NCBI RefSeq assembly: GCF_036588685.1
Contig: NC_086386.1
Coordinates: forward strand, 46,872,001-46,936,000
From: Mytilus trossulus
Taxonomy: Eukaryota
Reading direction: 5' to 3'
Length of the DNA: 64,000 nucleotides
Under the pieces are notes generated by a model, which ran no database searches, was not told where the DNA came from, and worked only from the letters and a program-made list of their open reading frames with translations. Of this stretch, positions 38,001 to 64,000 are shown one piece after another; position 1 is the stretch's first letter; the number at the start of each line of letters is the position of its first letter. The translations under genes and the position numbers were made by a program.

Positions 38001-41000
38001 TTCTGAATCTTTTCTTTTCCGTTTAGTTCTCACACTCTGTATAACATTCTTATGGTAATCACAGATATAGATATGGGAAACCTGTGGAGAGAAAACATTG
38101 ATGAAAAACTCATCTATGATAATTTGGTACACCAGATGATTTCATCTACATAAGACTTAGAAGTGGCACAGAACTCTAAACAGTTGCAAAGCCAAGCCAA
38201 TGATTATAAGATTCCATGTCATGTTTTACAGAAGTGTTATATGCACGTTTATGTATACATTCTAGCATAAGTATATATATATATTCCAAATTCCAAAACA
38301 GCTGCAGTAGCAAGGCTTCCAAAACGGTCATATATTCCGGTCATTTGTATAATGTCTTGTAAAAGTCCGGCTGGGCAAAACATAAAACGGTCATCTACTT
38401 TTTAGTTTCAAAGGCTTTTTCGGTCATTTTAACATATATAACATGTATAAATTCACGATCTTTTTGACCCAACTTTTTGCCTTTAACAGTCATACATTTT
38501 CGGTCATAAAAGTGACATGATGATTTTAATTACTATCAAAACAACCCCATCTTCAATATTTTCTAATTTTAATCAAGGCCAATTAGTTGTTGGACAGCTG
38601 AAAACTACCAGTTCAGGTGACAGGTAAACTATTTTCAGTACCGGACATCGTATAAATTAATCGGTCCATTCACAATTATTTTTGTACATTTCAGCGGTTT
38701 GTTTCTAATTGATTTAGTCCAAAAGATCAAATTTATAATAAATACATTTATAAACTTGATTTGATGAATCATTTAAAAAGGTTTCACATGAAAAATCGTC
38801 AGAACTATGTTGTATGAACAAGAACACGTGTGTGCATGTGCACAGGTGGGAAATTCAATTATGCATTCTACATTTCTTCAAAAATGCTAAAACTATCATT
38901 GATACCTGTATCTAACGTTCGTTTTAAGTATTTTGTTGAAGAAATTAAGTGGAAAGAGCTTCTTTGCTCAGTCGTGCTATGTAAATGTACACGGATTTTA
39001 CGTATCCGTTTATGGTCCATGTTTTACCATTGTCAAATCAACATCTGGTTTTGAAAAATGTGACTTAAAAGCGAAAATGAAGTTCTAGAGAACGTCATTT
39101 TGCACAAATAAAGAGTCTAACGCAGATATGAGCACACTGATGTACACACTCTGAATGATGCAATGCCAATTTTAACAGTTTATGTCAGAACATCAAATTC
39201 ATATCAAAGTAAAGTTTAATATTGTTTTAAATCTAATGTCAATCATTGGGATGGCCATCTGATAACCATAATTGCCTTTTGTGACTTAGTCATAGGGATT
39301 AAAAATTCGGATCAGATATAAAATGTCCGGCTGGCTCAGAAAAATTTTGGAAGCCCTGTGCAGTTGTAATTATATGGATAGCAAAGAAGTTGTATGTTAC
39401 AAAGCATTTTCTATTGCATGTCTGTCTGTAATCCTTTTCCAACAGTAAAACTTTGGATCCAGTTGGAGTGTTTTTGAATCCAATCTTTTACAATTGCCAA
39501 TATCAGGTTTGCAGGTTTGATATAGTTTTATTACATAGGACCATGACCATTGAATTGAGCTATGTCATTCAACTAGCAAATAAGTCATGCAATATTCAAA
39601 TTCTTATCTATCTTTTCACAAATTGACTGAAGGGTCAAACGCGTCTATGATTTTCATGTAGTGTAGGTTTTCTTTATTGTCATCATATTTATAAGGTATA
39701 TTTCCTTTGTACATGTTGTATATTGTACATAACCATTGTATACTGTACATTACCTTTGTATATTGTATATTACATTTGTATATTGTACATTACCTTTGTC
39801 AGTGTTTGGATATTGTATATTACCTATGTATATTGTATATTACATTTGTATATTATACATTACCTTTGTCAATGTTTGGATATTGTATATTACCTATGTA
39901 TATTGTATATTACATTTGCATATTATACATTACCTTTGTCAATGTTTGGATATTGTATATTACCTATGTATATTGTATATTACATTTGTATATTATACTT
40001 TACCTTTGTCAATGTTTGGATATTGTATATTACCTATGTATATTGTATATTACATTTGTATATTATACATTACCTTTGTCATATTTGTCAATGTTTGGAT
40101 ATAATATAATATATAATGACTTACACTATCATCCCTAACAAGTTTCAGTTTTCTCTGTTGAACTATTTTCTGTATTCTCTTGCTATAGCTTGCATTACCA
40201 GCATGGTTAGTACATCTATTTGTGTTGTCAATTAAACAACAGATCTGGTCATGACCATTACGGCTGTCTTCTTCAGTACTGAAATAAATCATAAGCATAC
40301 CATCATCTCTGAAAGATTACCCTACTGTATACTACAATTACTGATGACGAAACAATTATTCATTTAAAAGAATGGTAAAACCATCATGATATATGTCAAT
40401 ACAATTGAAAATTAGATAGGGAATGTGACAAAGAGACAATAACCTGATCAACAATGCAATGCAATGTAAATAAATATGTTTTTCTGTATACCTTTGTCCA
40501 AATTAGGTAATACAAGAATAAAATGATATACAACATGACCATAGAGCAAAAAACACACAAAAGTTACCAATGAATCTTCAAAACAGCTAGAAAATCCTGC
40601 ACCCAGAAGAAGGCTTCAGTTGGTATCTGAACAACAATCTGCACTAGTTCAGTGAAAATGGGTGTCACACTAAACTTTTTATTTACTAAATTAATAGCTA
40701 TGTGTGTTCCTTAAATTGTAATTTCAGACAATATTGTTTTCATAAAAAGTTGCTATATCTTTTAAAATGTAAATCTGTACCTTAAATGTTGACACAAACA
40801 AATGTATAAAAATAAAAGATAGAGCGCATAACAGGAAACTTGATTGACTTCCAGTTGTACAATAGTTTCCGTTCATTATATAATTATTTTAAAATATTCA
40901 TCAACTCTACAATACAAATGACCAAATTTTTCATTGGAAGGATTAAATACGGTAGATTAAATAGATAACTGAGAAAAAAATCAAGGATTCTGCAATTTAT

Positions 41001-44504: not shown

Positions 44505-45086
44505 TACTCACGACGTCACTTACAGGGAAAAAATGTCTGTTTATTCAAAATTCGTTTAATTTGGTTTTCTCTACACACTAAAACCTCAATCTGTCAACAA
44601 ACACACAACTGTGTTTTAGTTTGAAATGGCGGCTGTTGTGTACATGCATTGCAAGTTCATAGGTTAACACGCCAAATATGGCAAAAAGACTCCGCCCATA
44701 TATTTATATTTTGTTTTCTTGAAATTTTGTTTAGATTTGCCAAAGCATAATTTTTATAGATAATTATTTTTTTTATTGTTTGTTTCTTGAAAAATAACAT
44801 TCAGATGCATATTTTCAAATTCAGTCAAGTGTTGCAGTCACAATGATCTCTATTTGTTTACAACCAATGTGATTTTCAAACGTAAGTCACATGTCAAAAT
44901 CTCCTTTGACTTATCAATTTACATAAACGTCACGCACCTGCTAAATCATTGATTGGTCAATAAATCCATTCAATCGACAAATCATCCAATCAACGTTCAC
45001 GAATCGCCCCATAGCTTTGTCTATGTAGCCTGCATACTGTAGCGTGGGTTATCATTGCGGCATTTCCAGCTTGGGTATAGGTAAGT
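44505..45086. promoter_or_regulatory. Bidirectional promoter SAP30L/HMGB with leader exons on both strands
   Basis: Minus-strand donors GTGAGT (~44506-44511) and GTAAGT (44518-44523), a YY1-type AAATGGCGGC at ~44624-44633, a GC box at ~44692, three CCAAT boxes (~44864, ~44952, ~44986), and a plus-strand donor TAG|GTAAGT at 45080/45081. Confidence 0.7.
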
Positions 45087-48000
45087 CTGATCAATTTTAA
45101 ATTATTTCAAATGTGAAAAAAATATTTTAATAATTATAATGCAAAAGTAAAAGGATTTATCTTTCATTTTCATTAATTTGGTATCACTTGCGTTATCGGT
45201 GGAGGATGCATTTTGCCTCTGAAAAGTGTTGATTTTGCAGGATTAACACTGTAAGCAACCGCCATTACTTTATGCTTGTGGATGCCATTGCTGTAGTATT
45301 TGGATTACTCGCTCTGATATCTTTTTTCTGGTAAGGTAACATGTCAAACTAAGTAAAGACGTTTTATAATATTGACATTTGCTACATTTCTGTAAAATTT
45401 GAACAACCAGCGTTACTGAAAAGTTGTCGAAATCGACGATTCATTTTGTCGTTCCTTTGTGAAGAAAGCCGTACACAGCCATCAACGATAAACCAAGGCA
45501 TTTGCCTTGTACATAGAGTTACTATATAACCATAGGATTCTATGGGCAATGAAAACGGAAACCTTAAACTTTCTTGGAAACGATTGTAATTGATATTTAG
45601 CGAAATAACATCAAAGAAGGGTTAAATTTAACTGGACTTTCATTCATAGTATTGGAATTTGACTTTGAGAAGGTGCTTTTTGAGGTCGTTGTTTGTCGGC
45701 GGCAGAAATATGCGCCATGTCTGATTTTTACATTGAACAACATAGGGAAAATATCTTGCATAGGATAGCATGGGGGAAAATTTGTAATGTTTAAAAAAAA
45801 ATATTTACTAAATTAATAATAGAAGTGAAAGTTTAAAATCAATCTTTGTTTGTATTTCAATCTTTTCTTTGTTCCAAAACAGATGGAAACAGGTTTAAAA
45901 ACATAAATTATGAATTTTGAATTTTTTTCACAGAGAATACATGGGAATATTTGTGGATGAATTTTTATGCTATTTTTCAGCAGTTTGCATGTTTTAATGT
46001 TACTAATGGAATTTAATACTGAAAATTCTTCCCTGATATTATTTTTTGTATTGATTTTTTGTGATTTTTGAAATCAGACTTGTTGTTTGTGTGAATTTTT
46101 TAAGAAAAGGACAACAAAAGCTGAAGCTTCAATGCTAGAATACTGACATATTGCAATGTATTTAAACAAAAATATTCGATGTTTAAGTTGCACGATTCTT
46201 GAACGTTTCAGACACAAAGTGCAGTATTGTTAAAAAATTGAGATATATAATTCCACTGACTCGTCATCATTGAACAGGGTAAATTTTTCTAGAGAAAACT
46301 TTTTATGATTGAAATGTAGCCTCAAGAATGCTTAAAGATAAATAATATTCTAATGTACTGAGACTACTTTTTATCCCCAAAAAGGTTCACTTTCTATAAA
46401 TTTGGGCTCTTTGGCTCTTATGATTCAGCTTACTTGAATAGACCTGTCAAATTATGACTTCATAGAGGGAATATAACCCAAGTTGCCTGAATCATCTAAG
46501 GGAGAGTGTTTCTACTGTAGATGTGACATTTTTCAATGAATGACATGATTTCTTACTCAAGACTAGTCCGTCCTCGAAACTCCCTACAGGCACTCTTTAT
46601 TAATGAAAATAAACATGGTTACCTTGGACATTTCTACATGAACAGCGCATGGATTTGAAGTTGATGATTATGTATGACGTTCCATCAAACTCGTCTATCA
46701 TTCGGTATTTCGAGAAAAATGATCGTGAATTTCGAAAAAAATAAGTAACTGTGACCAAGTATTGTGATATGAATGTGAAGGAAATCTTATCAAGGAGACA
46801 CATGCAAGGTCAGTATTTATTCTAATTTTATTGAATTTTATTTTTAAGGATAAAAATCGGTAAAAAATAAAATCTGAAAACTGATTATTTCATGAAAAAT
46901 CAAAATATAAAGCTCGCTGTTTATATCATATTGCTCATCAATTTTGATAAAATAAAAAAAAAAGGGAAAATGTTTTCTTCATTACATGTATATTTCTGTT
47001 TTAAATGGCTCTTAAAATTATTTTATAATATCTTAATAACAAATTTTGCCAAAATTGACATATTAACATGAAATTGATATTAGACTGTGAAAGATCAAGT
47101 ATTGCTTTTGATTATTTCAAATGATCAGGTACAATTGTTGTAGGAATTCATTAAAGCTCTGGAATGATCTTATAAATTAAATTAAAAAAAAGGAGGGTGT
47201 TGAAAATGTTATGGTTTTAATCTTGCAAATATTAAGAATTGTTTTCTTACAGATTTTAGATGTTTTCACAGAATAAGTCACCAGATCTTTCACATTCAAT
47301 TGCAATACTTGAGCACCCATAATTTCATGATCATTTTTCTCGACATACCGAATGAAGGTTGTGAAACAGACATCTTTTAATAAACTATTGAACATAACTT
47401 TTGTTTTTCACTTTGCCACTGGCTGTCAATTTGAGTCGTGGGCAATCCATATAATGCTATTTATTAGACTTTTGTAAATTAGTGATTATCCAGTACTCAA
47501 TGAGATTATTTCTGACATTCTTGGGATTTCAATTGTCAAGTGACATGGAGTAGCCAAATAATATAGAAAAATGAGCAAAACTTGATAGTAGAAATAATTA
47601 CCAAATTTTTTAGGGGGTCTTGGAAATTTTAAGATTTTTTATGAAGAACCAAATATTTGTCATGTCTTTTTGGAAATCTGCTGCATTTATCATGTATTAA
47701 TACTAATTCAAGATTTTGTTTTTGATAAGAAGTTGGTTATTTTATCGACAAGAAATGAAATTTATGATATAATATTCTGTATGTTGCTAGCTTTATTAGA
47801 TATGGGATAAAATATTAAATTAATGCTAAACTTTTCACCAGCTGTTCTCAAGTTAAAAATAGCTTTCTTTAAAATGCAGTTCCATATTTGAGTAGGAATT
47901 ACCTCCCCTTCATCATGCAATTATACTATGCTTTGTGTATATGGTTATATACTGTTCTTATCAGGGCAACAGAACTGATAAAATGTATCTGTGCAATGAA

Positions 48001-48511
48001 AAGTATGAATCATTCAATAATTACTTGATAAATATTCTCCATTTGATGGGTTGAGCCCAACTTGTTTTATTTTCACTGAGCAGTCACACTAGCTTTTATA
48101 AAATATGGTGCAAATTAAAGATGATTTTTTGATTTTTTGTTGTTGAGCCCATTCAAGGTTTTTCTTTAAGGGGAGATATATGTACGTTTACATATCTTAG
48201 TTGTACAGCATCTATGATTCATGTCCCTTTTTGTCAGAAAAACTCCATAAACTTTCGAAAATAATGATTAAACTGAATCAAACTGAAAATCTTGCAGTTA
48301 AGGATAATAAATGTGCTCTTTTTTTTTAAACACAAGTTCCTGTAGAAATTGAAGTTCAATGGTTCAGACCAGTACCAGCTAAAGTCTGAGTGCTTAGTTA
48401 TAGCCTGCAATGTCTATCTATATTCAAATGTTTTTTTCTTGTGAAGAGTTTTCTTGCATAAAAATTTAATCATTTTATTTCAGAAATATTTCAATTTAAT
48501 ATTCAATCAAG

Positions 48512-50984
48512 ATGGGGAGGAAAGATGGAAAGCCACGTGGACGCATGTCCTCTTATGCCTTCTTTGTACAGACTTGTAGAGAGGAACACAAGAAAAAACA
48601 CCCAACAGAAAAAGTGGTGTTTGCTGAATTCACCAAAAAGTGTGCCGAAAAATGGAAGGTTAAGCACTATTTAATGAACTTGGAAACGGTGAAATACTTC
48701 AAACATTTTGGGCAACAATTATGTAAACTTATTCAATTTATATTATGGCAAACAATTATTTCATGACTCTTTAAAGCTATTCATTTTATAATATGTATCT
48801 TCTTTTTCTGTTCATAAATAATTTTGATATTATATTTTTATTCAAGATTATTTAATTCTGGTGTTTTTTTTATGCACAGGAAATGACTGGCAAGGAAAAG
48901 AAAAGATTTGAAGATATGGCAGAGAAAGACAAAGCTAGATATGAGGCAGAAATGAAGAATTATGTACCAGGGCCAGGAGAGAAAGTCGGAAGAAAGAAGA
49001 GAGAAAAAGATCCTAATGCACCAAAGAGATCCCTGTAAGTCTTAATATCTGAAATCATTATATATCCCCACTCTAGGAGTAGGGACTACTTTGTTATCAC
49101 ACTTGGCATTTTTGATCAAGATTTTCATAGAGATGAGTAATGCGGTTTGCTAAAACTTTAAATTTTTAAAGTTAAAGGAACCAAATTTTTTATCACACTT
49201 GTCTATCTACTAGTATACTATTGAAAACATGGACTTCTTAATTGGTCATTGTCCACCAGTGATAAGATCTTATATTTGGGTGCTTTACTAATCTGTAAGA
49301 CTTTAATTTTAGTTTTTTTTTATCATTTGAAGTCGGAACCATTTTGTTGGTTGCCTTTATCTAATTATGAAATTATTTTTCAGAAAAAAAATGTTTTTAA
49401 TGCAAAATCAGGAGCTCAATAAATCATTAAAACATAATGAAGTTTCATTGCAATTAAAATACTTATAATGACTTAATTTTCTTGCAGTTCTGCATTCTTT
49501 TTCTTCTGCAACGAAGAAAGACCAAGTGTCAGGAAAGATCATGGTGATTGGTCTGTAGCACAAGTTGCCAAGGAGATGGGAAAACGATGGGAGAAAGTAA
49601 CCGATAGATCAAAATATGAAAAGCAGGCAGCTGCAGATAAAATCAGATATGAACAGGTAGGTTGTAAACCATTGATAAAACAGAAGATGTGGTATGATTG
49701 CCAATGGAACAACTCTCCATAAGAGCCAAATGATGCAGAAATTAACAACTATAGGTCAATGTAAGGCCTTTGATAAGAGCAAAGCACAAACCGCATAGTA
49801 AGCTGTAAAAGGCCCACGGCCAGGCATGACAAATGTAAAATAATTAAAACCAGAAAAAAACTAACAGCCTAATTTATGTTTTTAAAAGGAAGAAAAAAAC
49901 AAACATGTTACACATAACAAATGACAACCACTAAATTACATGCTCCTGACTTGGGACAGGCACATACATACAGTATGTGGTTGGGTTACACATGTTAGCA
50001 GGATTCCAACCCTCTCCCTAATCGGGGACAGTGGTGGAAGTACAAACTATAAAAATCAGGTGAAAAAGGCATATCTTTTTTACAGGCTTTTTTGTCATTT
50101 CAATCAAATTTGACAATGATTTTGTGGGAAATTTTGTATAGATTCTTATGGCCTGTTCTTACAGGCCCAACAATAATTGTTCAAGTGTATAATAGACTTC
50201 TGTTCTTGAATTTTCCATCTGTCCAAAGAAATTTCAGTAGCATTTTCCCTGTGATCTACAAATTAATGAAATTTGTAATCAGCCTTCATATTGGCATTTC
50301 ACAATCCCCACTTATCAACCAGTTTACCAAATACTTTTTTGTTATTAGATTTGATGAGCATGTACAAAATTGTTTGTCAATAAAATTGAGAATGGAAATG
50401 GGTAATGTTTTCATTTTTGGATTCACAATCAGAGTATCATGAAAATCATGCGAGGTTTTTATTCTGATGGCCATTTGGGTCCATTGCTCATAACCTTCCT
50501 GTTTATCTTGTTCATTGCTATACTTGCTGATTATACCCATATAAGAAAAACCTCAAATCAGAGCTTCTTGAAAAAAAATTCAGGGTTATGGTTAAAATAC
50601 CTAACTGTGTAATGTGTTGTTTTCACATTCATAGCGCATCCACTTCCTGCCAACCATATACTTTTAGATTTTGTACCTTCCTGACAATGTATACATATAA
50701 TATGATATTTGCTTCACATTTCTTTTTATCATGTGATGCATATATACATCCATTGCTCTAGAATTTCCTGTTTGCCAAATACTTGAAGCAGGGATATCAT
50801 TAGTTCTTATATTAACTGATTCTTCTCCCCACAGGCAATGATAATATACAGGGGAGGTGGTGCAGCTCCAGCAAAGAAACCAGCAGGACCCCCAGCAAAG
50901 AAAGCCAAACCAGAGAGTGAAGAGGAGGGAGATGACGATGATGAAGAAGAAGAAGAAGAGGAGGATGAAGATGATGACGAATAA
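48512..50984 (+). CDS. HMGB: HMGB1/2-type high mobility group protein, cassette 1 (two HMG boxes plus acidic tail, 206 aa)
   Basis: Exons 48512-48658, 48880-49034, 49488-49656, 50835-50984. Protein: [31 protein letters not shown]...KKCAEKWK...[22 protein letters not shown]..., ending in a D/E tail. A 5'UTR acceptor lies at 48482-48483. Confidence 0.97.
49685..50070 (+). mobile_element. High-copy interspersed repeat (AGATGTGGTATGATTGCCAAT family); copies at ~35365-35555, ~55897-56185, ~63778-64000, inverted at ~10200-10405
   Basis: Shared AGATGTGGTATGATTGCCAATGAGACAAC...ATAGGTCA...GCCTTCAACAA...AAAGGCCC in multiple copies. Confidence 0.8.
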
Positions 50985-51392
50985 ACACTGGCAATTCTGT
51001 ATCATGAACAATTGGGGGGTATCCTGGATCAAGAAATGTACAATTTCTGTTATGTATAGTTGATCATTTGTATATATTGTTCATCTTAGATGATTGTATA
51101 TTTAACATTGTATATAAAATCATTATTTTATTCATCCCATCCAAGGGGAAACAATCCTGTCAATTCACTTCAAAACAAAATTACAGAAGCTTTCATGTAT
51201 GATATCGAATTATTAATACTTTCAGCGATGAATAAAAATATTTATCTATGTACATTTAAAATTTCATTCCTCTCAGACTTTCAAGTAAACAGCTACAATA
51301 CATTTTTCACTATGAAAGTGCTAAATATTTTTCATCACCATTATATTTTAATTATGAAATGTTAATGAATGTCATGTTTAAATAGATTTTAT

Positions 51393-51398
51393 AATAAA
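51393..51398 (+). terminator. Polyadenylation signal for HMGB cassette 1 (conserved at 55604-55609 and 63484-63489)
   Basis: AATAAA in the same conserved context (AAATAGATTTTATAATAAAACATA) in all three 3'UTRs. Homology between cassette 1 and cassettes 2/3 ends right after it. Confidence 0.7.
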
Positions 51399-53146
51399 AC
51401 ATAAGAATATAACTATATTTCTTCTTTGTAGCTCATCTGGCCCTTCGGTCCATCATGATTTTTTGCCATCACTTGTCATTCAGCATAAATTTATACGAGT
51501 TATTGTAATACCCAAACAGATGTTATTTAGCTAAATTGAAAAAAAATTAGCAGGCTTATTTATGTATAAAATATTGGAAAACAAAAAAATAAGCAACACA
51601 GCAACCACTGAATTTCAGGCTCCTGGCTTGAGACAGGCACATACAGAATGTGGTGGTTTAAACTAATTTGTTGGCACTAACCCTCCCATAACCCTGGACA
51701 CTGACGTTACAGTACAACATAAGAACAAACTATAAAAATCAGTTGAAAAAGGTTTAACTTGCTAGATGGATACAACAAGAAATACATCTAGAACAAAAAG
51801 TGAGTGGATGTTGATGGGTTCTTGTTCATCTCAACAACAAATAGACAGATCTGAGAGTACTCACAGCTAAAGCTACCAATAACTAATAAAAATAAGTCCT
51901 GCATCTAGGACTAAATTTCCAATGGATTTAATGTAAATCATAAACACAGAAAAACATGAGCTTGTGCAATGCCAATATACAGGTTTTAGAGAATGTGCAT
52001 ATGAATATAATGATAATACTAAGTTTAATTTTGTTTTACAATATAATAAATATTAATACCAATAATGTCACAGTAGAATAAATTCACTACCAGGCATTTG
52101 AGAATTCATGATCAGAAAATTTTAGTAATTGTAACCACAGGTTTTATTTGTAATATAAATTTTTATTTTTTTGTTTTAAAAAAATTATGATTATTTCTTT
52201 TGGTCATGATTGCATTGTGCACCTTCTACTTTACGTTTGATGCAAATGATACATTTTGTTGCTCATAAGATATAAAAGAAAATGTTATATATGTCACCAT
52301 GCCAATTCAGAATTTGTATTATTTTACTTACTATTAAGAAATTGACATTTCAAGACCAGTTGAATACATTATTATTTTAATTTGTTAAGTTACAGTAATT
52401 ATCATAAGAGACTACTCCTTAATTCATACTTATTGTAGTTTGAATAATAATGTAATGAGAAAATGTAACATTGAAAATTATATGAGTAATAATAATTATC
52501 TTTGTATTAATTAATGTGAATACTGTCACTTACATCTTAAGGTTATGACATGTCATCTTAATTAGAGTAATACTTCAAACTTGTCAAATTACAAATATTA
52601 CCTATGCTTAGTATAAATATTAGTAGTAAGCTTTGTTAAAAATAGACCACCCATACAGACTAGGATATAACTTCACAAAAGAGCAACAGAAAAAAAGTAG
52701 ATTTGTATTACATTGTATCGATACATGAAAACAAGTCCTTGTATAGGCATTAACCATTTTTTGAAAATTTGGCTTGGAATTAGTTTATACCCATTTATAT
52801 ATTGGTTATTTGTTAACTGCAACAATAATTTGCTTCATTGGTGTCTTATAGGCTAAAATGTTATAAAATCATGACAATGTTACATTACGGAGCCAACCTT
52901 TTTGGTAATACAGCATTAATGATGTGTTAGAAAAGTGCTGTCGGGTAAAGTTTTTTTTCCAAAACAAAGTATTGAGTGGAAATTGAAAATGAAATGATAC
53001 AAACCAGTTGGAGTACAGGCTGCAGTGGGAGTGTTTTCAACCTTTTATTTGAATAATTAAATGTTTTACATTATTAAAATTGCCTTCTTCCATATATTAA
53101 CAAATCATTTTATTTTCAGAACTATTTAAATCAATAATAAATCAAG

Positions 53147-55168
53147 ATGGGAAAGAAAGACGGAAAGCCCCGTGGACGTATGTCATCTTATGCCTTCTTT
53201 GTGCAGTCATTCAGAGAGGAACACAAGAAGAAAAATCCAACAGAAAAAGTTGTTTTTGCTGAATTCACAAAAAAATGTGCAGAAAAATGGAGGGCAAGTT
53301 TTTTATTCATAGATTTATGGAAAATTTCATCATTCTTTTAAGATATTTACTTGATTACAAGATTTTTCAAATGAACTGAAAAGTAGTCATGTATAACTGA
53401 CAACTGGGTAAACAATACTTTTGAGATTTAACCGTCAACTACCTTAAGTGTTATTAAATCAAAGTCAAAACATGCTGATTTCAAACTAAAATTTCCTTTA
53501 AATGATAGAAATAGTGAATTAGTTTGTTACGATAGAAAATATTATTTTGGATGTCAGAATACGTACTTAATTCTGGTTCTATTTTGTAGGAAATCAGTGC
53601 CAAGGAAAAGAGGAAATATGAAGAAATGGCAGAGAAAGACAAAGCTAGATATGAGGGAGAAATGCAAAATTATGAGCCAGGACCAGGAGAGAAGGTCGGC
53701 AGAAAGAAGAGAGACAAAGATCCTAATGCACCAAAGAGATCCCTGTAAGATCAATGCATATTTTTAGTGTTCAGCAGTCCAATGTTGCCTAAGCTTTTTT
53801 TTTTTTTTTTACTAAATGGTCCGGTTAATCTTGTTTGTGATGTGTAGATTTATACATTTTAAAATTTTTAAAAGTGAATAATTTTTTTATACATAATTTG
53901 AGGTTTAGTAGATAATTATTGTATAAACGAAAATTTAGATGCTATGTAGTGGGGCAATATTGGCTAATTTCTGAATTGTCTTCTGACTAAATATTTTTAT
54001 TTATTTGTCTGTCAACAGGGTATCCTATCCTGTATGCCAGTGACTAAAAAGATTGGCTATTTCTTAACATAAGATGAAAAGAAACCGAAGATAAATAATT
54101 TTTCTTTAACTTGATTGTAAGATCATTCCGATTGCAGTAAAAACATAAAATATCTTTTTTTTTTCTTACAGTTCTGCATTCTTTTTCTTCTGTAATGAAG
54201 AAAGACCAAAAGTAAGGAAAGATCATGGTGATTGGTCAGTAGCACTCGTAGCCAAGGAGATGGGAAAACGGTGGGAGAAACAAACAGATAGAACAAAATA
54301 TGAAAAACAGGCAGCCGCAGATAAAATCAGATATGAACAGGTAGGTTCAGCGTCATACAACTTAAAAACTACTACCAGCTTGGTTACTTATTGCTTTGCA
54401 ATTTCTATCAAAACATTAATGAATGTTTTGTCTGTATTCATTTCAATCTTAAATAAGGAGGGGTATTCTAAAATTGATTTGAGAGGAAGTTTGGAAAGTT
54501 CAATTTTTCTTGTACTCTTTATCCATACAATTCTCTTATGTTTTTATTGTTTCAAAAGTTAAACAATCGGTATCGCCAAATTAAATTACTCGCCTTTCAA
54601 ATTCTGGAAGCATCATTTGTATACAGCATTTACTGAAACTGCAATAATTGTTCTTTTAATCTATCTTTCGAAAAATTCCAATAATGAATAAAGACAGGAA
54701 TAAAAAGTTAAGATTTGAAGTTATGCTAGCTCCTACTGGATGAATTTTCTATTTTATGTATTTCTCTGAAAAAATTATACTTTTTACAACAACATGGGAA
54801 CACCAATTATCATTATGACATTTTAATAAGGTCATGTCCATGTCTTGTGAAGAACAACAAAGTCGGAATGTTGCTCCCATAGACTCAAGGTAAATAAAAA
54901 ACATAAAATACCTACCTACCCTAACTTTTTTCAGATGTAACTAGAACCACACATACTATTTTATTTGGCCTTATTGCAGTTCCATGTAGATACTTTATTA
55001 AATCGTTTCTTCTCCCCACAGGCAATGGCAAAATACAGGGGAGGTGGTGCAGCTCCAGCCAAGAAACCTGCAGGACCCCCAGCAAAGAAACCCAAGCCAG
55101 AGAGTGAAGAAGAGGAAGATGACGATGATGAAGAAGAGGAGGAGGAGGATGAAGATGATGACGAATAA
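53147..55168 (+). CDS. HMGB: HMGB1/2-type protein, cassette 2 (205 aa); first coding intron is GC-AG
   Basis: Exons 53147-53293 (donor AGG|GCAAGT), 53590-53744, 54172-54340, 55022-55168. The first three coding exons have the same lengths as in cassette 1 and the frame is intact. A 5'UTR acceptor lies at 53118-53119. Confidence 0.92.
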
Positions 55169-57687
55169 ACACTGGCAATTCTGTATCATGAACAATTGGG
55201 GGGTATCCTGGATCAAGAAATGTACAATTTCTGTTATGTATAGTTGATCATTTGTATATATTGTTCATATTAGATGATTGTATATTTATCATTGTATATA
55301 AAATCATTATTTTATTCATCCCATTCAAGGGGAAACAATCCTGTCATCTTTCTTCAGAACAAAATTTGAGTAGTTTTTATGATATTGTCGAGTATTTATA
55401 CATGTTCATGATGAATTTAAAATTTAACTGTGTAAAATATTTTAAGTTTCATCGGCTTCACTGACCTACAGGCTAACAGCTACATTATTATCTTTTTGCT
55501 ATGGAGCAATGTAAAAGAAATGACTGAAAGTGCTGTATTTTTCATCACCATTTTTGTTTTAATCATGAAATGTCAATGAATGTCATGTTTAAATAGATTT
55601 TATAATAAAACATATTTTAACTTGCTTAATTCTTTTTTTAACCAAACTTGGCACCAAGGCAATTTTACTGAAAACGTTTATTAACTTTTATTAAGAGTGA
55701 TTGCCTATAAACGATTGTTTTAACAAACTATTGCCTATTGTCTTCAAAACTATAATAGGTAGAAGTTCTTAGTGGGTTTGATCAGGCCTTTATCAAACAA
55801 GAGACTTGCAAATTTGAATGAAGTGTGAATAATTTGTACCATTATGGAGAAATGTGGACTTGTCACAGGAACTATGTTATTGAAATCCAGCTCTGCAGAT
55901 GTGGTATGATTGCCAATGAGACAACACTCCACAAGAGACCAACTGGCAGAAATAAACAGCAATAGGTCACCGTTTAGCCTTCAACAATAAGAAAAGTCCA
56001 TACTGCATAGTCGGCTTTAAAAGGCCCAGAAATCAAATGTAAAACAAACTAACGGCCTTATAAATGTACACAAAAAATGATGAAACAAGAAATATGTAAC
56101 ACAGCAACAAATGACAACGACTGAATTACAGGCTCTTGACATGGGATAGGCACATACATACAGAATGTGACTGGTGTAACAGTACATCATAATAGTCCAG
56201 TCAATCTAGCATAAATTTCACCCTAACCTTGAAGTAATTGCAACAGAAGATTTTTAAGTTTTAATCTTTAGCATTATATCCAAAAATATACACAGAAAAA
56301 AGTCCCATAAAATCTAACTTGAGAAAAACTAAAAAAATCATGATTTCAAAATTCCTGTGGAGAATTGCATTGATAAGGGAGATAACTCTGCAAAAAAGGC
56401 AGAAATATCAATGAAAATTCAACAATGGACTATCATTTGCTCTTGATTTTTTTTCATTTTCATAGTACATGTATACCTTCTGATATGTGGTTTTTTTTGT
56501 CTCTCAACATATATTTATTTTCTAGTAATTCAACAACAATGTTCGTCAAAGTTTCATAAGATTACTCGCCAAAACGTAATACTAAAAATAAATTGACTGA
56601 AAGTATAATTATATACATATTATCTTAAATTATGTTATATGAATTTAAGGTGCAATTACTACATAAGTAAGCCGCCTTCCAAAACCAATAACAACAACAA
56701 TGTATTGATTCTAGACATTTTAGCCATCTTTAGAGTATAAAAAACAACTATAAAGGTGTTTTCATATTTTTAGCTCACCTGGCCCAAGTGAGCCTTTCTC
56801 GTCACTTGTCGTCCGTCGTCATTAACTTTTACAAAAATCTTCTCTGAAACTACTAGGACAAATTCAACCAAACTTGTCCACAATCATCATTAGGATATCT
56901 AGTTTAAACTAGAGGCTCTCAAGAGCCTGTGTCGCTCACCTTGGTGCATATTAAACAATGGACACATGACGAAATTGTGGTTTTGTGATGTGTTTGTAGA
57001 TCTTAATTTCCTGTACATTCTTGTTGCTACAATTATCTTTATCTATTAAGAACTTGGCCCAGTAATTACAGTGGAAAATATATTCAAAAAATTTATGAAA
57101 ATTGTTAAAAAATGACTATAAAGGGCAATAACTCCTTAAGGGATAAACTGACAATTTTGGTCATTTGACTTATTTGTAGATCTTACTTTGCTGAACATTA
57201 TTGCTGTTTACAGTCTATCTCTATCTATTATAATATTCAAGATAATAACCAAAAACTGCAAAATTTCCTTAAAATTACTAATTCTGGGGCAGCAACCCAA
57301 CAACAGGTTGTCTGTTTTGTATGAAAATTTATGGGCTGATAATAATAATAATAATTCTTTATTTAAAGAGGGTTACACAGTTAGCTATAAAGCTAATCTT
57401 CCCTGAGGCCCTCATGAAATACAATCAATAACCGACTAGATAGATCTTCACCTGATCAACAATTTATCCCCCGCGACAGATTTGCTCTAAATGCTTTGGT
57501 TTCAGAGATATAAGCCAAAATCTACATTTCGCCCCCCTATGTACTATTTTTAGCCATATTGTAATAATTGTATAGACCTTAACCATTGTTTGTAACTTTG
57601 GCTTGGAATTAAAAAATGAATATGTTGGATATTTGTAAACTGCAATAATTATTACCTGTCTTTGGTGTCTTTTAAACTGAAATGATT

Positions 57688-59629
57688 TTTATACGACTGC
57701 AAATTTTGAAAAAAATTTCGTCGTAAATTGCTATCACGTTGGTGTCGTCGTCGTCCGAATACTTTTAGTTTTCGCACTCTAACTTTAGTAAAAGTGAATA
57801 GAAATCTATGAAATTTTAACACAAGGTTTATGACCATAAAAGGAAGGTTGGTATTGATTTTGGGAGTTTTGGTCCCAACATTTTAGGAATTAGGTGCCAA
57901 AAAGGGCCCAAATAAGCATTTTCTTGGTTTTCGCACTATAACTTTAGTTTAAGTTAATAGAAATCTATGAAATTTTGACACAAGGTTGATGACCACAAAA
58001 GAAAGGTTGGGATTGATTTTGGGAGTTTTGGTTTCAACAGTTTAGGAATTAGGGGCCAGAAAAGGGCCCAAATAAGCATTATTCTGGGTTTTCGCACAAT
58101 AACTTTAGTTTAAGTAAATAGAAATCAATGAAATTTAAATATAATGTTTTTGACCACAAAAGGAAGATTGGTATTGATTTTGGAAATTTAGATCCAAACA
58201 GTTTAGGAATTAGGGGCCAAAAAGGGACCCAAATAAGCATTTTTCTTGGTTTTCGCACCATAACGTTAGTATAAGTAAATAGAAATCTATGAAATTTAAA
58301 CACAAGGTTAATGACCATAAAAGGAAAGTTGATATTGATTTTAGGAGTTTTGGTCCCAACAGTTTAAGAAAAAGGGGCCCAAAGGGTCCAAAATTAAACT
58401 TTGTTTGATTTCATCTAAATTGAATAATTGGGGTTCTTTGATATGCCGAATCTAACTGTGTATGTAGATTCTTAACTTTTGGTCCTGTTTTCAAATTGGT
58501 CTACATTAAGGTCCAAAGGGTCCAAAATTAAACTTAGTTTGATTTTAACAAAAATTGAATCTTTGGGGTTCTTTGATATGCTGAATCTAAAAATGAACTT
58601 AGATTTTTTATTATTGGCCCAGTTTTCAAGTTGGCCCAAATCGGGGTCCAAAATTAAACTTTTTTGATTTCATCAAAAGTTGAATAAATGGGGTTCTTTG
58701 ATATGCCAAATCTAACTGTGTATGTAGATTCATCATTTTTGGTCCCGTTTTCAAATTGGCCTACATTAAGGTCCAAAGAGTCCAAAATTAAACTAAGTTT
58801 GATTTTAACAAAAATTAAATTCTTGGGCCTCTTTGATATGCTGAATCTAAACATGTACTTAGATTTTTGATTATGGGCCCAGTTTTCAAGTTGTTCCAAA
58901 TCAGGATCTAAAATTATTATATTAAGTATTGTGGAAAAGCAAGTCTTTTCAATTGCACAGTATAGTGCAATGGCAAGAAATATCTAATTTCACAATATTG
59001 TGAAATAGCAAATTTTTTTTTAATTAGAGTTATCTTTCTTTGTCCAAAATAGTAAGCAAGAAATATCTTATTGCAAGAATTTTTTTTAATTGGAGTTATC
59101 TTTCTTTGTCCAGAATCAACTTAAATCTTTGTTATATACAATATACAATGTATATTCACTTTTTACTACCAACTGATAAATTTAAATAATCTTTACCATT
59201 CAGTGATAACAAGCAGTTTTTTTACATTTTATTTTATGATGTATTTAAATGAGTAGTTATTGTTGCAAACTCCATTAGAATATTTTAATTGAGATTAGTT
59301 TTGGAATAAGGGAAAGGGGGATGTGATTAAAAAATTGGGTTCAATTTTTCTCATTTGAAATTTCATAAATAAAAAGAAAATTTCTTCAAAAATTATTTTG
59401 AGAGGATTAATATTGAACAGCATAGTGAATTGCTCTAAGAGAAAACAAAAATTTTAAGTTCATTAGAACACATTCATTCTGTGTCAGAAACCTATGCTGT
59501 GTCAACTATTTAATCACAATCCAAATTTAGAGCTGAATCCAGCTTGAATGGTGTGTCCATACTTGCCCCAACCGTTCAGGGTTCAACCTCTGCGGTCGTA
59601 TAAAGCTACGCCCTGCGAAGCATCTGGTT
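57688..59629. mobile_element. Helentron/HINE-like non-autonomous element with internal tandem arrays (~160-bp and ~245-bp units), inserted upstream of HMGB cassette 3
   Basis: Subterminal inverted repeats TTTATACGACTGCA / TGCGGTCGTATAAA, a GTC microsatellite near the start, and internal repeats. It interrupts sequence that is contiguous upstream of cassette 2 (~52850-52870). Confidence 0.8.
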
Positions 59630-60046
59630 AATGATTTAAAAAATAAAATCATGACCCATAACATAAAGGGAGCCAACCAAGCACCATCAGCCTCATTGTT
59701 GTTTATATTTTAGATTTTGGTAATACAGCATCTGTGTGTCCTTAGTTTTGTCAGAAAAACATTTTATTAACTTTAGGAAATAATTCCATAAACAATCTTG
59801 ACAAAAACTGAATGTAGTCTTGTGTGTCAGAATAAGCTGTCGTGTAAAAGTTGTGCTCTTTTCTAAAAACAAAATATCCAGAGGAAATTGAAGATGAATG
59901 ATTCAAAACAGTGGGAGTGCTTACAATGTTAAATTTGAGTATTCAAATGTTTTACACTGAGAATTGCCTTCACTTGCATATACATGTACATTGTATAAAC
60001 AAATCATTTTATTTTCAGAAATATTTCAAATCGATATTAAATCAAG

Positions 60047-63000
60047 ATGGGAAGGAAAGATGGAAAGCCACGTGGACGTATGTCATCTTATGTCTTCTTT
60101 GTGCAGTGTTTTAGAGAGGAACACAAGAAAAAAAATCCAACAGAAAAAGTTGTGTTTGCTGAATTCTCGAAAAAGTGTGCTGAAAAATGGAGGGTACGGT
60201 TTTTGATTGCATTATTTTATGGGAAATTTACTATAAGGTTTGCCTGTCCCTTGATTATATCTTCCCTTGGACCAAGGACAACATTCTACTTAAGGAGTGT
60301 TTCTTCCTCTGGGTTTTTTTTAAAAACCTTGTCCAGGAGGTCCATATTTTTTTTCTTTTTGACACTCGCTTATGATATTTAGCATGCATGGTGCTGACAT
60401 AAATCATAATGGTTCTTCCCATAATTCATTATGAACTTTGAAGCATAATTTTATCTTGCCTGAAGCTCAATAGGCCTTATTTTTTTACATTTTTGTGTGG
60501 AACATTCCATTCTTTGACGGGCTTTTGATATTTGGTGCATGGATGCACCACATGAAGACAATGTGTTGATTTCCATGGAAGAATACTATGTACTTGTTAT
60601 CTTTATATGTCCATCTTAAAACCTCACATATTCTTATTTGACATGGCAAGACTTTTTTAATGCATCTAATTATTTCTCCGAGTCATGTTCTACTCATTCT
60701 ATAATAAATTGTAAGATATATTGAAAAAATATGGTTAAGATCCTCACCCTTAATCATATAATTCTATCTAGTTGTCTGTTGCGCTGCGAAGGATATAGGA
60801 ATGGTCTTATGTCTGTCCAAAACACATCATTACTCAGAGACCGTTTGACAGAAAGCTCTCATTCATGGTAGGATTGTTTGCCACCATGTCCAGTTGACCA
60901 TATTATACCAATCATTTACGGGGAGATATGGGTAGTAGGTCTCATGTAAGCTGTTACCTGTATACTATAGTCTTTATTTACAAATGTAGCTTAAGTATGA
61001 AAGGTCATTTTTCCATTTTAGGCATTTTATTTAAGCAAAAGAGATCAGGCAAAATTTTAAAAATGTACTGCCAAGTAATCATGTACAATTTACAACTGGG
61101 TAATCAATACCTTAAGAGATTTAACAGTCAGAGTCCACTACTAGTGGTGTCAATAAATCAAAATCAAAACATTCTGATTTCAAACTGTGAACTTGCTTAG
61201 ACTTGCAATTTGATAGAAGTAATGATTTTATTTGTTACAATAGATGAATATTATTTTGTATGTAAGAATTCTGGTTTTGTTTTGTAGGAAATCAGTGCAA
61301 AGGAAAAGAGGAAATATGAAGATATGGCAGAGAAAGACAAAGCTAGATATGAGGGAGAAATGCAAAATTACGAGCCAGGACCAGGAGAGAAAGTTGGAAG
61401 AAAGAAGAGAGATAAAGATCCCAATGCACCAAAGAGATCCCTGTAAGATGAATGCATATGTAGTGTGGCAATATTGGCTAATTTCTGAATCATCTTACGT
61501 CTAAATATTTGAATGACTTGTCTGGGTTAAAAATTTACAACAGGATAAAAGTGGGAGCCAGGGACTAAAAGGATTATTAGATTCTTAATTTGTAATCATT
61601 TAAAGTACATAAATGATTCTTGAAGTAAGACATTTTCCCAATTCAATGTGGGTATTGCAATATATTAATTTCATGTCATGCTTTGTTATTCATTGTTGTT
61701 TATTTTGGTACATATAAATATCAACATATAATTTCTCTTTAACCTCCTTTCCCTTAATACTGCATTATACTGGCACAAATGAAGTCTTGTGGATTATAAG
61801 TTTTTCTAGAGCAGCTTGAATTGTCGGTAATGTCTGATTTTGTAGACACTTGTGTGACTAGGTGTCTAGGGCAAAAATGTTCTTAATATTTTGGCTTATT
61901 GCATTGAACATGGGTAAATCTATTGATTTTGTGGCTGAGCTGACATAAGATGAAAAGAATCCCAAGATAAATAATTTTTCTTTAGCTTGATGTAAGATCA
62001 ATCCAATGGCAGGAAATACATAAAATAACTATTTATTTTCTTACAGTTCTGCATTCTTTTTCTTCTGTAACGAAGAAAGACCAAAAGTAAGGAAAGATCA
62101 TGGTGATTGGTCAGTAGCACTCGTAGCCAAGGAGATGGGAAAACGGTGGGAGAAACAAACAGATAGAACAAAATATGAAAAACAGGCAGCCGCAGATAAA
62201 ATCAGATATGAACAGGTAGGTTTGGCATCATACAACTTAAAAACTACTACCAGCTTGGTTACTTATTGCTTTGCAATTTCTATCAAAACACATTAATGTT
62301 TTGTCTGTATGCATTTCAATCTTCAATAAGGAGGGTATTCTAAACTTGATTTTAGAGGAAGTTTGGAAAGTACAATTTTTCTTGTACTCTTTATCCATAC
62401 AATTCTCTTATGTTTTTATTGTTTCGAAAGTTAAACAGAATCGGTATCGCCAAATTAAATTACTCGCCTTTCAAATTCTGGAAGCATCATTAGTATACAG
62501 CATTTACTGAAACTGCAGTAATTGTTCTTTTTATCTATCTTTCGAAAAATTCCAATAATGAATAAAGACAGGAATAAAAAGTTAAGATTTGAAGTTATGC
62601 TAGCTCCTACTGGATGAATTTTCTATTTTATGTATTTCTCTGAAAAAATTATACTTTTTACAACAACATGGGAACACCATTTATCATAATGACATTTTAA
62701 TAAGGTCATGTCCTTGTCTTGTGAAGAACAACAAACTCGGAATGTTGCTCCCATAGACTCAAGGTAAATAAAAAACATAAAATACCTACCTACCTACCCT
62801 AACTTTTTTTCAGATGTAACTAGAACCACACATACTATTTTATTTGGCCTTATTGTTTTTCCATGTGGATACTTTATTAAATCGTTTCTTCTCCCCACAG
62901 GCAATGGCAAAATACAGGGGAGGTGGTGCAGCTCCAGCCAAGAAACCTGCAGGACCCCCAGCAAAGAAACCCAAGCCAGAGAGTGAAGAAGAGGAAGATG

Positions 63001-63047
63001 ACGATGATGAAGAAGAGGAGGAGGAGGATGAAGATGATGACGAATAA
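60047..63047 (+). CDS. HMGB: HMGB1/2-type protein, cassette 3 (205 aa)
   Basis: Exons 60047-60193, 61288-61442, 62047-62215, 62901-63047, with intact frame and GT-AG introns. A 5'UTR acceptor lies at 60017-60018. Confidence 0.94.
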
Positions 63048-64000
63048 ACACTGGCGATTCTGTATCATGAACAATTGGGGGGGTATCCTGGATCAAGAAA
63101 TGTACAATTTCTGTTATGTATAGTTGATCATTTGTATATATTGTTCATCGTAGATGATTGTATATTTATCATTGTATATAAAATCATTATTTTATTCATC
63201 CCATTCAAGGGGAAACAATCCTGTCATCTTTCTTCAGAACAAAATTTGAGTAGTTTTTATGATATTGTCAAGTATTTATACATGTTCATGATGAATTTAA
63301 AATTTAACTGTGTAAAATATTTTAAGTTTCATCGGCTTCACTGACCTACAGGCTAACAGCTACAATATTTTCTTTTTGCTATGGAGCAATGTAAAGGGAA
63401 TGACTGAAAGTGCTGTATTTTTCACCACCATTTTTGTTTTAATCATGAAATGTCAATGAATGTCATGTTTAAATAGATTTTATAATAAAACATATTTTAA
63501 CTTGCTTAATTCTTTTTTTAACCAAACCTGGCACCAAGGCAATTTTACTGAAAACATTTATTAACTTTTATTAAGAGTGATTGCCTTTAAACGACTGTTT
63601 TAACAAACTATTGCCTATTGTCTTCAAAACTATAATAGGTAGAAGTTCTTAGTGGGTTTGATCAGGCCTTTATCAAACAAGAGACTTGCAAATTTGAATG
63701 AAGTGTGAATAATTTGTACCATTATGGAGAAATGTGGACTTGTCACAGGAACTATGTTATTGAAATCCAGCTCTGCAGATGTGGTATGATTGCCAATGAG
63801 ACAACACTCCACAAGAGACCAACTGGCAGAAATTAACAGCAATAGGTCACCGTTTAGCCTTCAACAATAAGAAAAGTCCATACTGCATAGTCAGCTTTAA
63901 AAGGCCCAGAAATCAAATGTAAAACAAACTAACGGCCTTATAAATGTACACAAAAAATGATGAAACAAGAAATATGTAACACAGCAACAAATGACAACGA

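What the first reader, a model, noticed from the sequence alone, without database searches (positions are those of the whole stretch)
44860..63500. One promoter, three whole-CDS HMGB cassettes: candidate cassette-choice locus
Seen in the sequence: three intact HMGB coding units. Each starts at a homologous acceptor 27-28 nt before the ATG (TTTCAG|AA...AATCAAG-ATG at 48484, 53120, 60019) and each has its own conserved AATAAA. Visible homology of cassettes 2/3 to cassette 1 extends only ~300 bp into intron 1. The CCAAT/YY1 promoter and leader-exon donor (45080) occur once, and I see no copy of them in 51.4-53.1 kb or 55.6-60.0 kb, which are AT-rich or transposon-filled. Inference: the duplication excluded the promoter, yet both downstream cassettes kept open frames and splice sites despite substantial divergence. 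They may therefore be expressed by splicing the shared leader to alternative acceptors, in competition with upstream polyadenylation. That would be the mirror image of protocadherin/UGT1A variable-first-exon clusters.
Basis: partly seen in the sequence, partly recalled or inferred. Interest (0 to 1): 0.8.

Follow-up and report, generated by a model that had tools for sequence, protein, structure and literature searches.

The report
Mussel HMGB gene array, shared leader
A mussel (Mytilus trossulus) carries four tandem, intact HMGB chromatin-protein genes, and a "fossil" cDNA copy elsewhere in the genome shows that one upstream leader exon was spliced over the whole first gene onto the second, but the second gene also has an upstream leader exon of its own, so this is a nested tandem gene family with at least two alternative leader exons, not a one-promoter cassette switch.

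Summary
Three intact HMGB units lie in the window, and a fourth lies 4 kb past its end. Each has the acceptor TTTCAG|AA 27-28 nt before its ATG, its own AATAAA, and dN/dS of 0.06-0.20 in every informative comparison. The leader at 45040-45080 is unique in the 1.3 Gb genome, apart from one processed retro-pseudogene on contig C6.

That retrocopy has an A13 tail and an 11-13 nt target-site duplication. It joins 45080 directly to 53120 and carries exons 2-5 of copy 2 at 98-99% identity. So the predicted junction 45080>53120, which skips copy 1, existed in a heritable mRNA.

The "one promoter" reading fails on other evidence. An RNA contig joins copy 2's exon 2 to a different leader that ends at 52696|GT, 424 nt upstream, with a TATAAATA 77 nt before the donor. 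A copy-1 contig runs colinear from 48348 through the "acceptor". The 300 nt upstream of the acceptor is conserved between copies whose intron interiors are saturated. The distal leader shows almost no contig depth in four RNA runs.

RefSeq proteins fit this picture. Copy 2's protein carries two accessions. In M. californianus a chimera of copy-1 and copy-2 exons is listed as an isoform.

The closest known analogue is the ChAT/VAChT locus. The 5' ends of copies 3 and 4 remain unknown.

The parts
44864..44990 (+). Distal promoter region with three CCAAT/ATTGG boxes (44864, 44952, 44986), 50-180 nt upstream of the leader
   Evidence: Three boxes in 200 nt against a window mean of 0.45. Promoter function is inferred from position only.
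45040..45080 (+). Distal non-coding leader exon. The extent shown is the minimum, as preserved in the retrocopy. The donor is TATAG|gtaagt at 45080.
   Evidence: Retrocopy L002 carries 45040-45080 (40 of 41 identical) joined directly to copy 2's exon 2. The leader is unique in the genome otherwise.
48348..48483 (+). Stretch upstream of copy 1's exon 2 that is present in a colinear RNA contig. It is either a proximal transcription start or an alternative 5' UTR. It begins at a block, GAAATTGAAG, conserved in all copies.
   Evidence: X5 record 24 (48348-48598, 251 nt, depth 1241, against about 33 just upstream). Conservation (copy 1 vs copy 3, z=20.6).
48484..48658 (+). Copy 1 exon 2 (ATG at 48512)
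   Evidence: RNA joint 48658>48880.
48880..49034 (+). Copy 1 exon 3
   Evidence: RNA joints 48658>48880 and 49034>49488, both GT..AG.
49488..49656 (+). Copy 1 exon 4
   Evidence: RNA joints 49034>49488 and 49656>50835.
50835..51410 (+). Copy 1 exon 5 with acidic tail, stop codon at 50982-50984, and AATAAA at 51393. The 3' end is approximate.
52612..52619 (+). TATAAATA, 77 nt upstream of the donor of copy 2's own leader. Candidate TATA box.
   Evidence: Function inferred.
52667..52696 (+). 3' part of copy 2's own upstream leader exon. The donor is AAAAAAA|gtagat at 52696, giving a 423-nt intron (52697-53119) to 53120. The 5' limit is unknown.
   Evidence: the X5 loose end before 48498 reads AGAGCAACAGAAAAAAA followed by AACTATTTAAATC, which is copy 2's exon 2 start. 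The first 16 letters, AGAGCAACAGAAAAAA, were searched and occur once in the window, at 52680-52695; the 17th letter (A, 52696) agrees, and GT follows. This region is unique in the genome.
53120..53293 (+). Copy 2 exon 2 (ATG at 53147; GC donor)
   Evidence: The retrocopy shows both the acceptor at 53120 and the GC donor in use.
53590..53744 (+). Copy 2 exon 3
54172..54340 (+). Copy 2 exon 4
55022..55623 (+). Copy 2 exon 5 and 3' UTR. AATAAA at 55604. The poly(A) site at about 55623 is given by the retrocopy.
57568..57684 (+). Start of the copy 3 duplication unit. It is homologous to 52739-52860, which lies in copy 2's intron 1.
57768..58916 (.). Satellite arrays (periods 161 and about 125-135/260 nt) inserted upstream of copy 3
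60019..60193 (+). Copy 3 exon 2 (ATG at 60047)
61288..61442 (+). Copy 3 exon 3
   Evidence: Contigs in X2 carry an exon 2-exon 3 junction of copy 3/4 type (GAAATCAGTGCA).
62047..62215 (+). Copy 3 exon 4
62901..63503 (+). Copy 3 exon 5 and 3' UTR (AATAAA at 63484)

Best explanation
This is a tandem array of four intact HMGB1/2-type genes in Mytilus trossulus. Copies 1-3 lie in the window and copy 4 lies just beyond it. The array was built by unequal crossing-over of units that begin about 0.3-0.4 kb upstream of the first coding exon.

The ancestral non-coding exon 1 (45040-45080) and its CCAAT-box promoter exist only once. Even so, that leader can be cis-spliced across an 8-kb intron holding all of copy 1 onto the conserved acceptor of copy 2. 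Copy 1 is therefore nested in the first intron of this long copy 2 transcript.

The copies also do not depend on that leader. Copy 2 has a second upstream leader exon (...52696), probably driven by its own TATA promoter. Copy 1 yields transcripts that start, or at least run colinear, about 165 nt before its ATG, inside a non-coding block conserved in every copy.

The locus therefore works like a complex transcription unit with a shared distal leader plus copy-specific proximal 5' ends. I infer that the distal promoter acts mainly in germline or early embryo, which is where a heritable retrocopy must arise. I infer that the proximal 5' ends serve the tissues sampled by the four RNA runs.

Shown: gene integrity and purifying selection, the junction 45080>53120 (as a retrocopy), the junction 52696>53120 (as an RNA contig), and the copy 1 exon junctions.

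Inferred: that 52696 ends a true first exon, the start near 48348, the tissue split, and any role for copies 3 and 4.
For: Gene family and species:
- Exon 2 peptides hit HMG_box_2 at E 1e-11 to 2e-13.
- Exon-wise translations equal RefSeq 'high mobility group protein B2-like' of M. trossulus: copy 1 = XP_063413513, copy 2 = XP_063413515/516, copy 4 = XP_063413517. These sit on a contig of 81,773,519 nt, the same length as the window's contig.

Array structure:
- Copy 3's 5' part is 98% identical to copy 4, and its 3' half is 97% identical to copy 2.
- dN/dS is 0.06-0.20 in all comparisons with informative dS.

Retrocopy on C6:
- It is intronless, with an A13 tail, the target-site duplication CGATATAAAAT and an in-frame TAG.
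- Its exons 2-3 are 98% identical to copy 2, against 90-93% to copies 3/4 and 85-88% to copy 1.
- Its leader is 40/41 identical to 45040-45080 and abuts 53120 exactly.

Own leader of copy 2.

Copy 1 colinear contig and copy 1 exon joints.

Upstream conservation: z=20.6 for copy 1 vs copy 3, against z of about 0-2 for intron interiors.

RefSeq hints:
- Two accessions share copy 2's protein, which fits two 5' UTR variants.
- M. californianus isoform X3 equals X1 residues 1-101 plus the X2 remainder, so transcripts cross cassette borders in a congener.
Against: - The 45080>53120 junction is seen only as one DNA fossil that differs from copy 2 at about 1.7% of sites, not in present-day RNA.
- In four RNA-like contig sets the leader bin 44950-45149 has depth 0.5-11, against 10^3-10^4 in the exons, and no listed joint starts at 45080. 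The tool warns that holes and contig depths prove little.
- The 52696 leader rests on one contig in one run, from an organism coded differently from some of the others. That contig starts about 30 nt before the junction, which fits a k-mer graph branch. So the exon's 5' end is unseen and it could be an internal exon.
- Mytilus is known for presence/absence variation, so the retrocopy's parent haplotype might have lacked copy 1.
- Nothing is known about the 5' ends of copies 3 and 4.
Confidence: 0.65

Rival explanations
1. A single promoter at about 45.0 kb drives one long pre-mRNA. Every cassette, copies 1 to 3 or 4, is expressed only by splicing the shared leader to its acceptor, in competition with the upstream poly(A) sites.
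For: The junction 45080>53120 is preserved in the retrocopy. The acceptor is conserved in all copies. The leader and promoter are single-copy in the genome. All copies are under purifying selection.
Against: Copy 2's exon 2 is joined to a different upstream exon at 52696 in RNA. A copy 1 contig runs colinear through the acceptor from 48348. The distal leader is almost uncovered in four RNA runs. The upstream 300 nt is conserved in each copy.
Confidence: 0.07
2. Four ordinary, independently transcribed tandem genes. The distal promoter belongs to copy 1 alone. The 45080>53120 splice was rare read-through noise (a conjoined transcript) that happened to be retrotransposed.
For: Copy 2 has its own leader and a TATA box. 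The distal leader has low depth. Conjoined transcripts between neighbouring genes are common (general knowledge).
Against: The genome holds only one HMGB retrocopy, and it carries this very junction. If the form were a rare fraction of germline copy 2 mRNA, that would be an unlikely draw. Copy 2's protein has two RefSeq accessions. M. californianus has annotated cross-cassette isoforms. No evidence links the leader to copy 1 either.
Confidence: 0.2
3. There was no skipping at all. The retrocopy came from a haplotype or ancestor in which copy 1 was absent, so the leader was simply copy 2's ordinary first exon. Copy 1 is a later insertion, or a presence/absence variant, in intron 1.
For: Mytilus genomes are rich in presence/absence variation (general knowledge). 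The retrocopy shows only the spliced product, not what lay in the intron.
Against: Copy 1 and copy 2 differ by dS of about 0.41. Both types exist in M. californianus, M. coruscus, M. edulis and M. galloprovincialis. The retrocopy differs from copy 2 by only about 1.7%. So copy 1 long predates the retrocopy, although its position at that time is not shown.
Confidence: 0.08

Closest known systems
Cholinergic gene locus (VAChT nested in the first intron of ChAT)
   Same: A complete coding unit lies in the same orientation inside the first intron of a transcript that starts at an upstream non-coding exon. Several promoters and alternative splicing produce the mRNAs, and gene-specific promoters lie inside that intron (PMC3053374 and the references it cites).
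   Different: Here the nested and host units are paralogues of one gene, in an array of four, rather than two unrelated genes. Use of the shared leader by the nested copy 1 is not shown.
Protocadherin and UGT1A variable-first-exon clusters
   Same: Tandem alternative units are joined by cis-splicing to one shared exon across long introns that contain the other units.
   Different: In those clusters each variable exon has its own promoter and the shared part is 3' and coding (my own knowledge). Here the shared part is a 5' non-coding leader and each unit is a whole coding sequence with its own poly(A) site. At least copy 2 also has a separate leader, so the choice is not made by one promoter.
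Conjoined or read-through transcripts between tandem paralogues
   Same: Transcripts pass an upstream gene's poly(A) site and splice into the downstream paralogue. M. californianus isoform X3 is such a chimera of copy 1 and copy 2 exons.
   Different: The leader-to-copy-2 form skips every exon of the upstream gene and encodes an unaltered copy 2 protein.
Vertebrate HMGB1/HMGB2 gene layout
   Same: A non-coding exon 1, the ATG in exon 2, four coding exons, two HMG boxes and an acidic tail (the layout is from my own knowledge; the domains are).
   Different: Vertebrate paralogues are dispersed single genes. Here four copies sit in tandem behind one exon 1.
LINE-mediated processed pseudogenes as fossils of splice forms
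   Same: The retrocopy is intronless, has a poly(A) tail and a target-site duplication, lies on another chromosome, and is disabled by a stop codon.
   Different: None. It is a textbook case, used here as evidence.

Membership tests
HMGB (two HMG boxes plus acidic tail) | HMG-box A | tested here: met
   The exon 2 peptides of all three copies hit PF09011 at E 2e-13 to 1e-11, and exon 3 completes the box.
HMGB (two HMG boxes plus acidic tail) | Second HMG box and C-terminal Asp/Glu tail | tested here: met
   Identical full-length RefSeq proteins carry PF00505 and PF09011. The exon 5 translations end in [20 protein letters not shown]. The short exon 4 piece I scanned on its own gave no hit.
Single-promoter cassette-choice locus (mirror of Pcdh/UGT1A) | The shared leader is spliced to more than one cassette | tested here: inconclusive
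   Leader to copy 2 is shown by the retrocopy. Leader to copy 1 and leader to copies 3/4 are not seen in the listed joints. Most joints and loose ends were not listed.
Single-promoter cassette-choice locus (mirror of Pcdh/UGT1A) | Cassettes lack 5' exons and promoters of their own | tested here: not met
   Copy 2's exon 2 is joined to an exon ending at 52696. A copy 1 contig is colinear from 48348. The upstream blocks are conserved.
Nested gene sharing a 5' exon (cholinergic-locus type) | A whole coding unit lies inside the first intron of a same-strand transcript | tested here: met
   Copy 1 (48484-51410) lies within the intron 45081-53119 defined by the retrocopy junction.
Nested gene sharing a 5' exon (cholinergic-locus type) | Both genes use the common 5' exon | tested here: inconclusive
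   This is shown only for copy 2. No listed evidence exists for copy 1.
Processed retro-pseudogene | Intron loss at exact exon borders, poly(A) tail, target-site duplication, different locus | tested here: met
   L002 on contig C6 has exon blocks that abut, an A13 tail, the duplication CGATATAAAAT on both sides, and a TGG>TAG stop after residue 121.

The most novel reading that the evidence does not exclude
The Mytilus HMGB array is a true regulated cassette-choice unit. A germline or embryonic CCAAT-box promoter makes one long pre-mRNA over four or more whole-coding-sequence cassettes. Competition between splicing and polyadenylation selects which HMGB variant is made; the variants differ at the redox cysteine near residue 22. 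The proximal starts provide somatic expression. This would be a 5'-shared counterpart of the protocadherin and UGT1A clusters, built from entire genes.
Probability: 0.15. Interest if true: 0.7.

Novelty: new member of a known kind. Interest (0 to 1): 0.45.

Why it matters
The locus shows how tandem duplicates that lost the ancestral first exon can stay expressed in two ways at once. They can borrow the single upstream leader across a nested paralogue, and they can use or acquire proximal 5' ends.

It also shows that a retro-pseudogene can prove a long-range splice when RNA data are thin.

For mussel biology, it defines four HMGB variants that differ at a cysteine implicated in HMGB redox signalling. 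Their expression may be coupled through shared transcription.

The proteins are already in RefSeq, so the news is the architecture, not the genes.

Tried and rejected
- Exon 2 peptide word search: only 70-82% relatives and no fragment from this species, so no transcript contigs were reachable that way.
- JGI metagenome scan with copy 2's protein: the patterns were swamped by the acidic tail. The single locus found is unrelated (30% identity).
- Homologue of copy 2's own leader upstream of copy 1 or copy 3: none found. Copy 2 to copy 3 homology starts 43 nt downstream of that donor.
- Further retrocopies that could reveal the leaders of copies 1, 3 or 4: none. The other hits are acidic-tail low complexity.
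- SL trans-splicing as the source of the conserved acceptor: rejected for copy 2, because both observed leaders are genomic sequences in cis.
- Literature: no paper on Mytilus HMGB gene structure was found.
- Joined exon models: I searched no joined exon model. Exons were searched one at a time. For full-length relatives I used the natural uninterrupted ORF of the retrocopy (L002:1285-1647, minus strand).
Full report
**What is there**

The window comes from contig C14 of a 1.30 Gb assembly. Exon-wise translations are identical to RefSeq "high mobility group protein B2-like" proteins of Mytilus trossulus. Those proteins lie on a contig of the same length as the window's contig, 81,773,519 nt.

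ORF listing, alignment and Pfam confirm three HMGB units.
- The ATGs are at 48512, 53147 and 60047.
- Each ATG is preceded by tttcag|AA at 48484, 53120 and 60019.
- Each unit has four coding exons with matching borders and phases.
- Each has AATAAA at a conserved place: 51393, 55604 and 63484.
- Copy 2's exon 2 donor is GC rather than GT.

A genome search adds a fourth tandem copy, with its ATG at extended coordinate 67963, 4 kb past the window's end. It also finds one copy on contig C6.

**How the array arose**

Copy 3's upstream region, exon 2 and the start of intron 2 are 98% identical to copy 4. Its 3' half is 97% identical to copy 2. Copy 3 is therefore a product of unequal crossing-over or conversion between a copy-2-like and a copy-4-like gene.

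Copy 1 is old. Its dS against the other copies is 0.32-0.41. dN/dS is 0.06-0.20 in every comparison with useful dS, so all four copies are kept by selection. I summed the counts exon by exon and built no joined sequence.

**The shared leader**

The promoter and leader at 44800-45400 have no second copy in the window. In the whole genome, 44990-45080 matches only itself and the C6 copy.

The C6 copy (locus L002) is a textbook processed retro-pseudogene.
- Blocks equal to copy 2's exons 2, 3, 4 and 5 abut without introns. They show 3/174, 3/155, 1/169 and 4/150 mismatches. The same blocks are only 85-93% identical to copies 1, 3 and 4 in exons 2-3.
- An A13 tail follows the AATAAA-directed end at 55623.
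- The 11-nt CGATATAAAAT is repeated on both sides.
- A TGG>TAG change stops the frame after residue 121.
- Its 5' end is TAGCGTGGGTTATCATTGCGACATTTCCAGCTTGGGTATAG. That is window 45040-45080 with one mismatch, joined directly to AACTATTTAAATC, which is copy 2's exon 2 from 53120.

So an mRNA with the junction 45080>53120 existed in cells that contribute to the germ line. The boundary sits exactly on a GT donor and an AG acceptor, which points to splicing and not to reverse-transcriptase template switching. It makes copy 1 a gene nested in an 8-kb first intron.

**Why "one promoter" fails**

I laid contigs of four public runs on 44950-50949 at 80% likeness, so that all copies would land on copy 1. 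The runs behave as RNA. Exon bins reach 10^3-10^4 and intron bins reach tens. GT..AG joints at 48658>48880, 49034>49488 and 49656>50835 confirm copy 1's exons.

Three results bear on the 5' ends.

1. One X5 contig of copy 2 type has a 42-nt loose end before 48498. It reads ...AGAGCAACAGAAAAAAA followed by AACTATTTAAATC.
   - The first 16 letters of that 17-mer were searched and occur exactly once in the window, at 52680-52695. The 17th letter (A, 52696) agrees with the genome, and GT follows immediately, 424 nt upstream of copy 2's acceptor.
   - A TATAAATA lies at 52612.
   - The region is unique in the genome.
   - The contig begins about 30 nt before the junction, as expected at a k=31 graph branch. 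The exon's 5' end is therefore unseen. Calling it a first exon rests on the TATA box only.

2. An X5 contig of copy 1 type (record 24, depth 1241) is colinear from 48348 to 48598. It runs straight through the "acceptor", while depth just upstream is about 33. It starts at a block, GAAATTGAAG, shared by all copies.

3. No listed joint or contig piece touches the distal leader. Its bin has depth 0.5-11.

The tool warns that contig depth cannot rank genes and that holes prove nothing. Most joints and loose ends were not listed. Result 3 is therefore only suggestive.

**Upstream conservation**

The -335..-36 stretch before the acceptor aligns between copy 1 and copy 3 with z=20.6, and between copy 1 and copy 2 with z=5.8. 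The interiors of introns 2-4 between copy 1 and the other copies are at background (z of about 0-2, with one value of 4.6).

The duplicated units thus carried along, and have kept, about 300 nt of non-coding sequence. That fits a proximal promoter or an alternative 5' UTR. TATA-like motifs also lie 20-30 nt before each acceptor, but I have no evidence that they work.

**Database hints**

Copy 2's protein carries two RefSeq accessions, XP_063413515 and XP_063413516. That is what two transcripts differing only in their UTR would give.

In M. californianus, the copy-1-like and copy-2-like products are labelled isoforms X1 and X2 of one gene. X3 equals X1 residues 1-101 (exons 2-3) followed by the exact X2 remainder (exons 4-5). 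The annotation pipeline therefore saw transcripts crossing from one cassette into the next.

**Copies 3 and 4**

Contigs in X2 carry an exon 2-exon 3 junction of copy 3/4 type, GAAATCAGTGCA. Those copies, or their orthologues in the sampled species, are therefore probably expressed.

Their 5' ends are unknown.
- Copy 2 to copy 3 homology begins at 52739=57568, which is 43 nt downstream of copy 2's own leader donor.
- It is then broken by satellite arrays at 57768-58916.
- So copy 3 did not inherit a recognisable copy of that leader.

**Reading**

The locus is best described as a nested tandem gene family with a shared distal leader plus copy-specific proximal 5' ends. The closest known arrangement is the cholinergic locus. 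There, VAChT lies in ChAT's first intron, and several promoters and alternative splicing serve both genes (PMC3053374).

The genome's only HMGB retrocopy carries the distal-leader form. That argues the form was not a trace species in germ cells. It is an inference, and so is the germline-versus-soma division.

Alternatives are listed under rival explanations: the pure single-promoter model, mere read-through noise, and a parent haplotype without copy 1.

**Limits**

- There was one read-laying run, on contigs only.
- The runs are of coded organisms, possibly several Mytilus species.
Exons were searched separately. The natural retrocopy ORF served as the query for full-length relatives.
- The literature search found nothing on this locus.

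Noticed in passing
extended coordinates 67935-71731 (G000:C14:46939935-46943731), outside the window; locus L009: A fourth intact HMGB copy (protein XP_063413517). Copy 3 is a mosaic. Its 5' part is 98% identical to copy 4 and its 3' half is 97% identical to copy 2. This indicates recent unequal crossing-over or conversion with a period of about 7.9 kb.
   Followed up: yes
L002 (G000:C6:89207759-89208899, minus strand): A processed HMGB retro-pseudogene derived from copy 2, with an A13 tail, an 11-13 nt target-site duplication and an in-frame TAG. It is the only HMGB retrocopy found in the assembly.
   Followed up: yes
window 53294-53299: Copy 2's exon 2 has a GC donor (GGAGG|gcaagt), where copies 1, 3 and 4 have GT. 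The retrocopy shows that it is spliced correctly.
   Followed up: partly
window 49675-50050 (copy 1 intron 4); related copies at 35357, 10210-10419, 4484-4536, 15273-15357, 55897-56169 and 63777-63908: A short dispersed repeat (SINE-like). It attracts very large numbers of RNA contigs (depth 2x10^4 to 6x10^4) and many spurious joints in the read laying.
   Followed up: no
window 45211-45783: In all four runs one contig covers this stretch just downstream of the distal leader (depth 6-78, about twice the following intron). A strong donor-like site, CTG|gtaagg, lies at 45331 but is not seen spliced. This could be precursor RNA from the distal promoter or a separate transcript.
   Followed up: no
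window 37929-40298, minus strand: SAP30-like coding exons (a CCL...RC zinc-finger motif in ORF 40050-40298) lie head-to-head with the HMGB array, about 4.7 kb from the distal HMGB promoter.
   Followed up: partly
window 48572-48577, 53207-53212 and 60107-60112 (codons 21-22 of exon 2): The copies differ at the cysteine near residue 22. Copy 1 has T-C, copy 2 has S-F (no cysteine), and copies 3 and 4 have C-F. So the array encodes variants with and without this box A cysteine.
   Followed up: no
proteins P0025, P0144 and P0151 (Mytilus californianus RefSeq): Isoform X3 is an exact chimera of the copy-1-like exons 2-3 and the copy-2-like exons 4-5. Cross-cassette splicing is therefore annotated in a congener.
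   Followed up: partly
window 57768-58916 (also 65667-66818 in L009): Two adjoining satellite arrays (161-nt units, and about 125-135/260-nt units) lie in the upstream region shared by copies 3 and 4.
   Followed up: no
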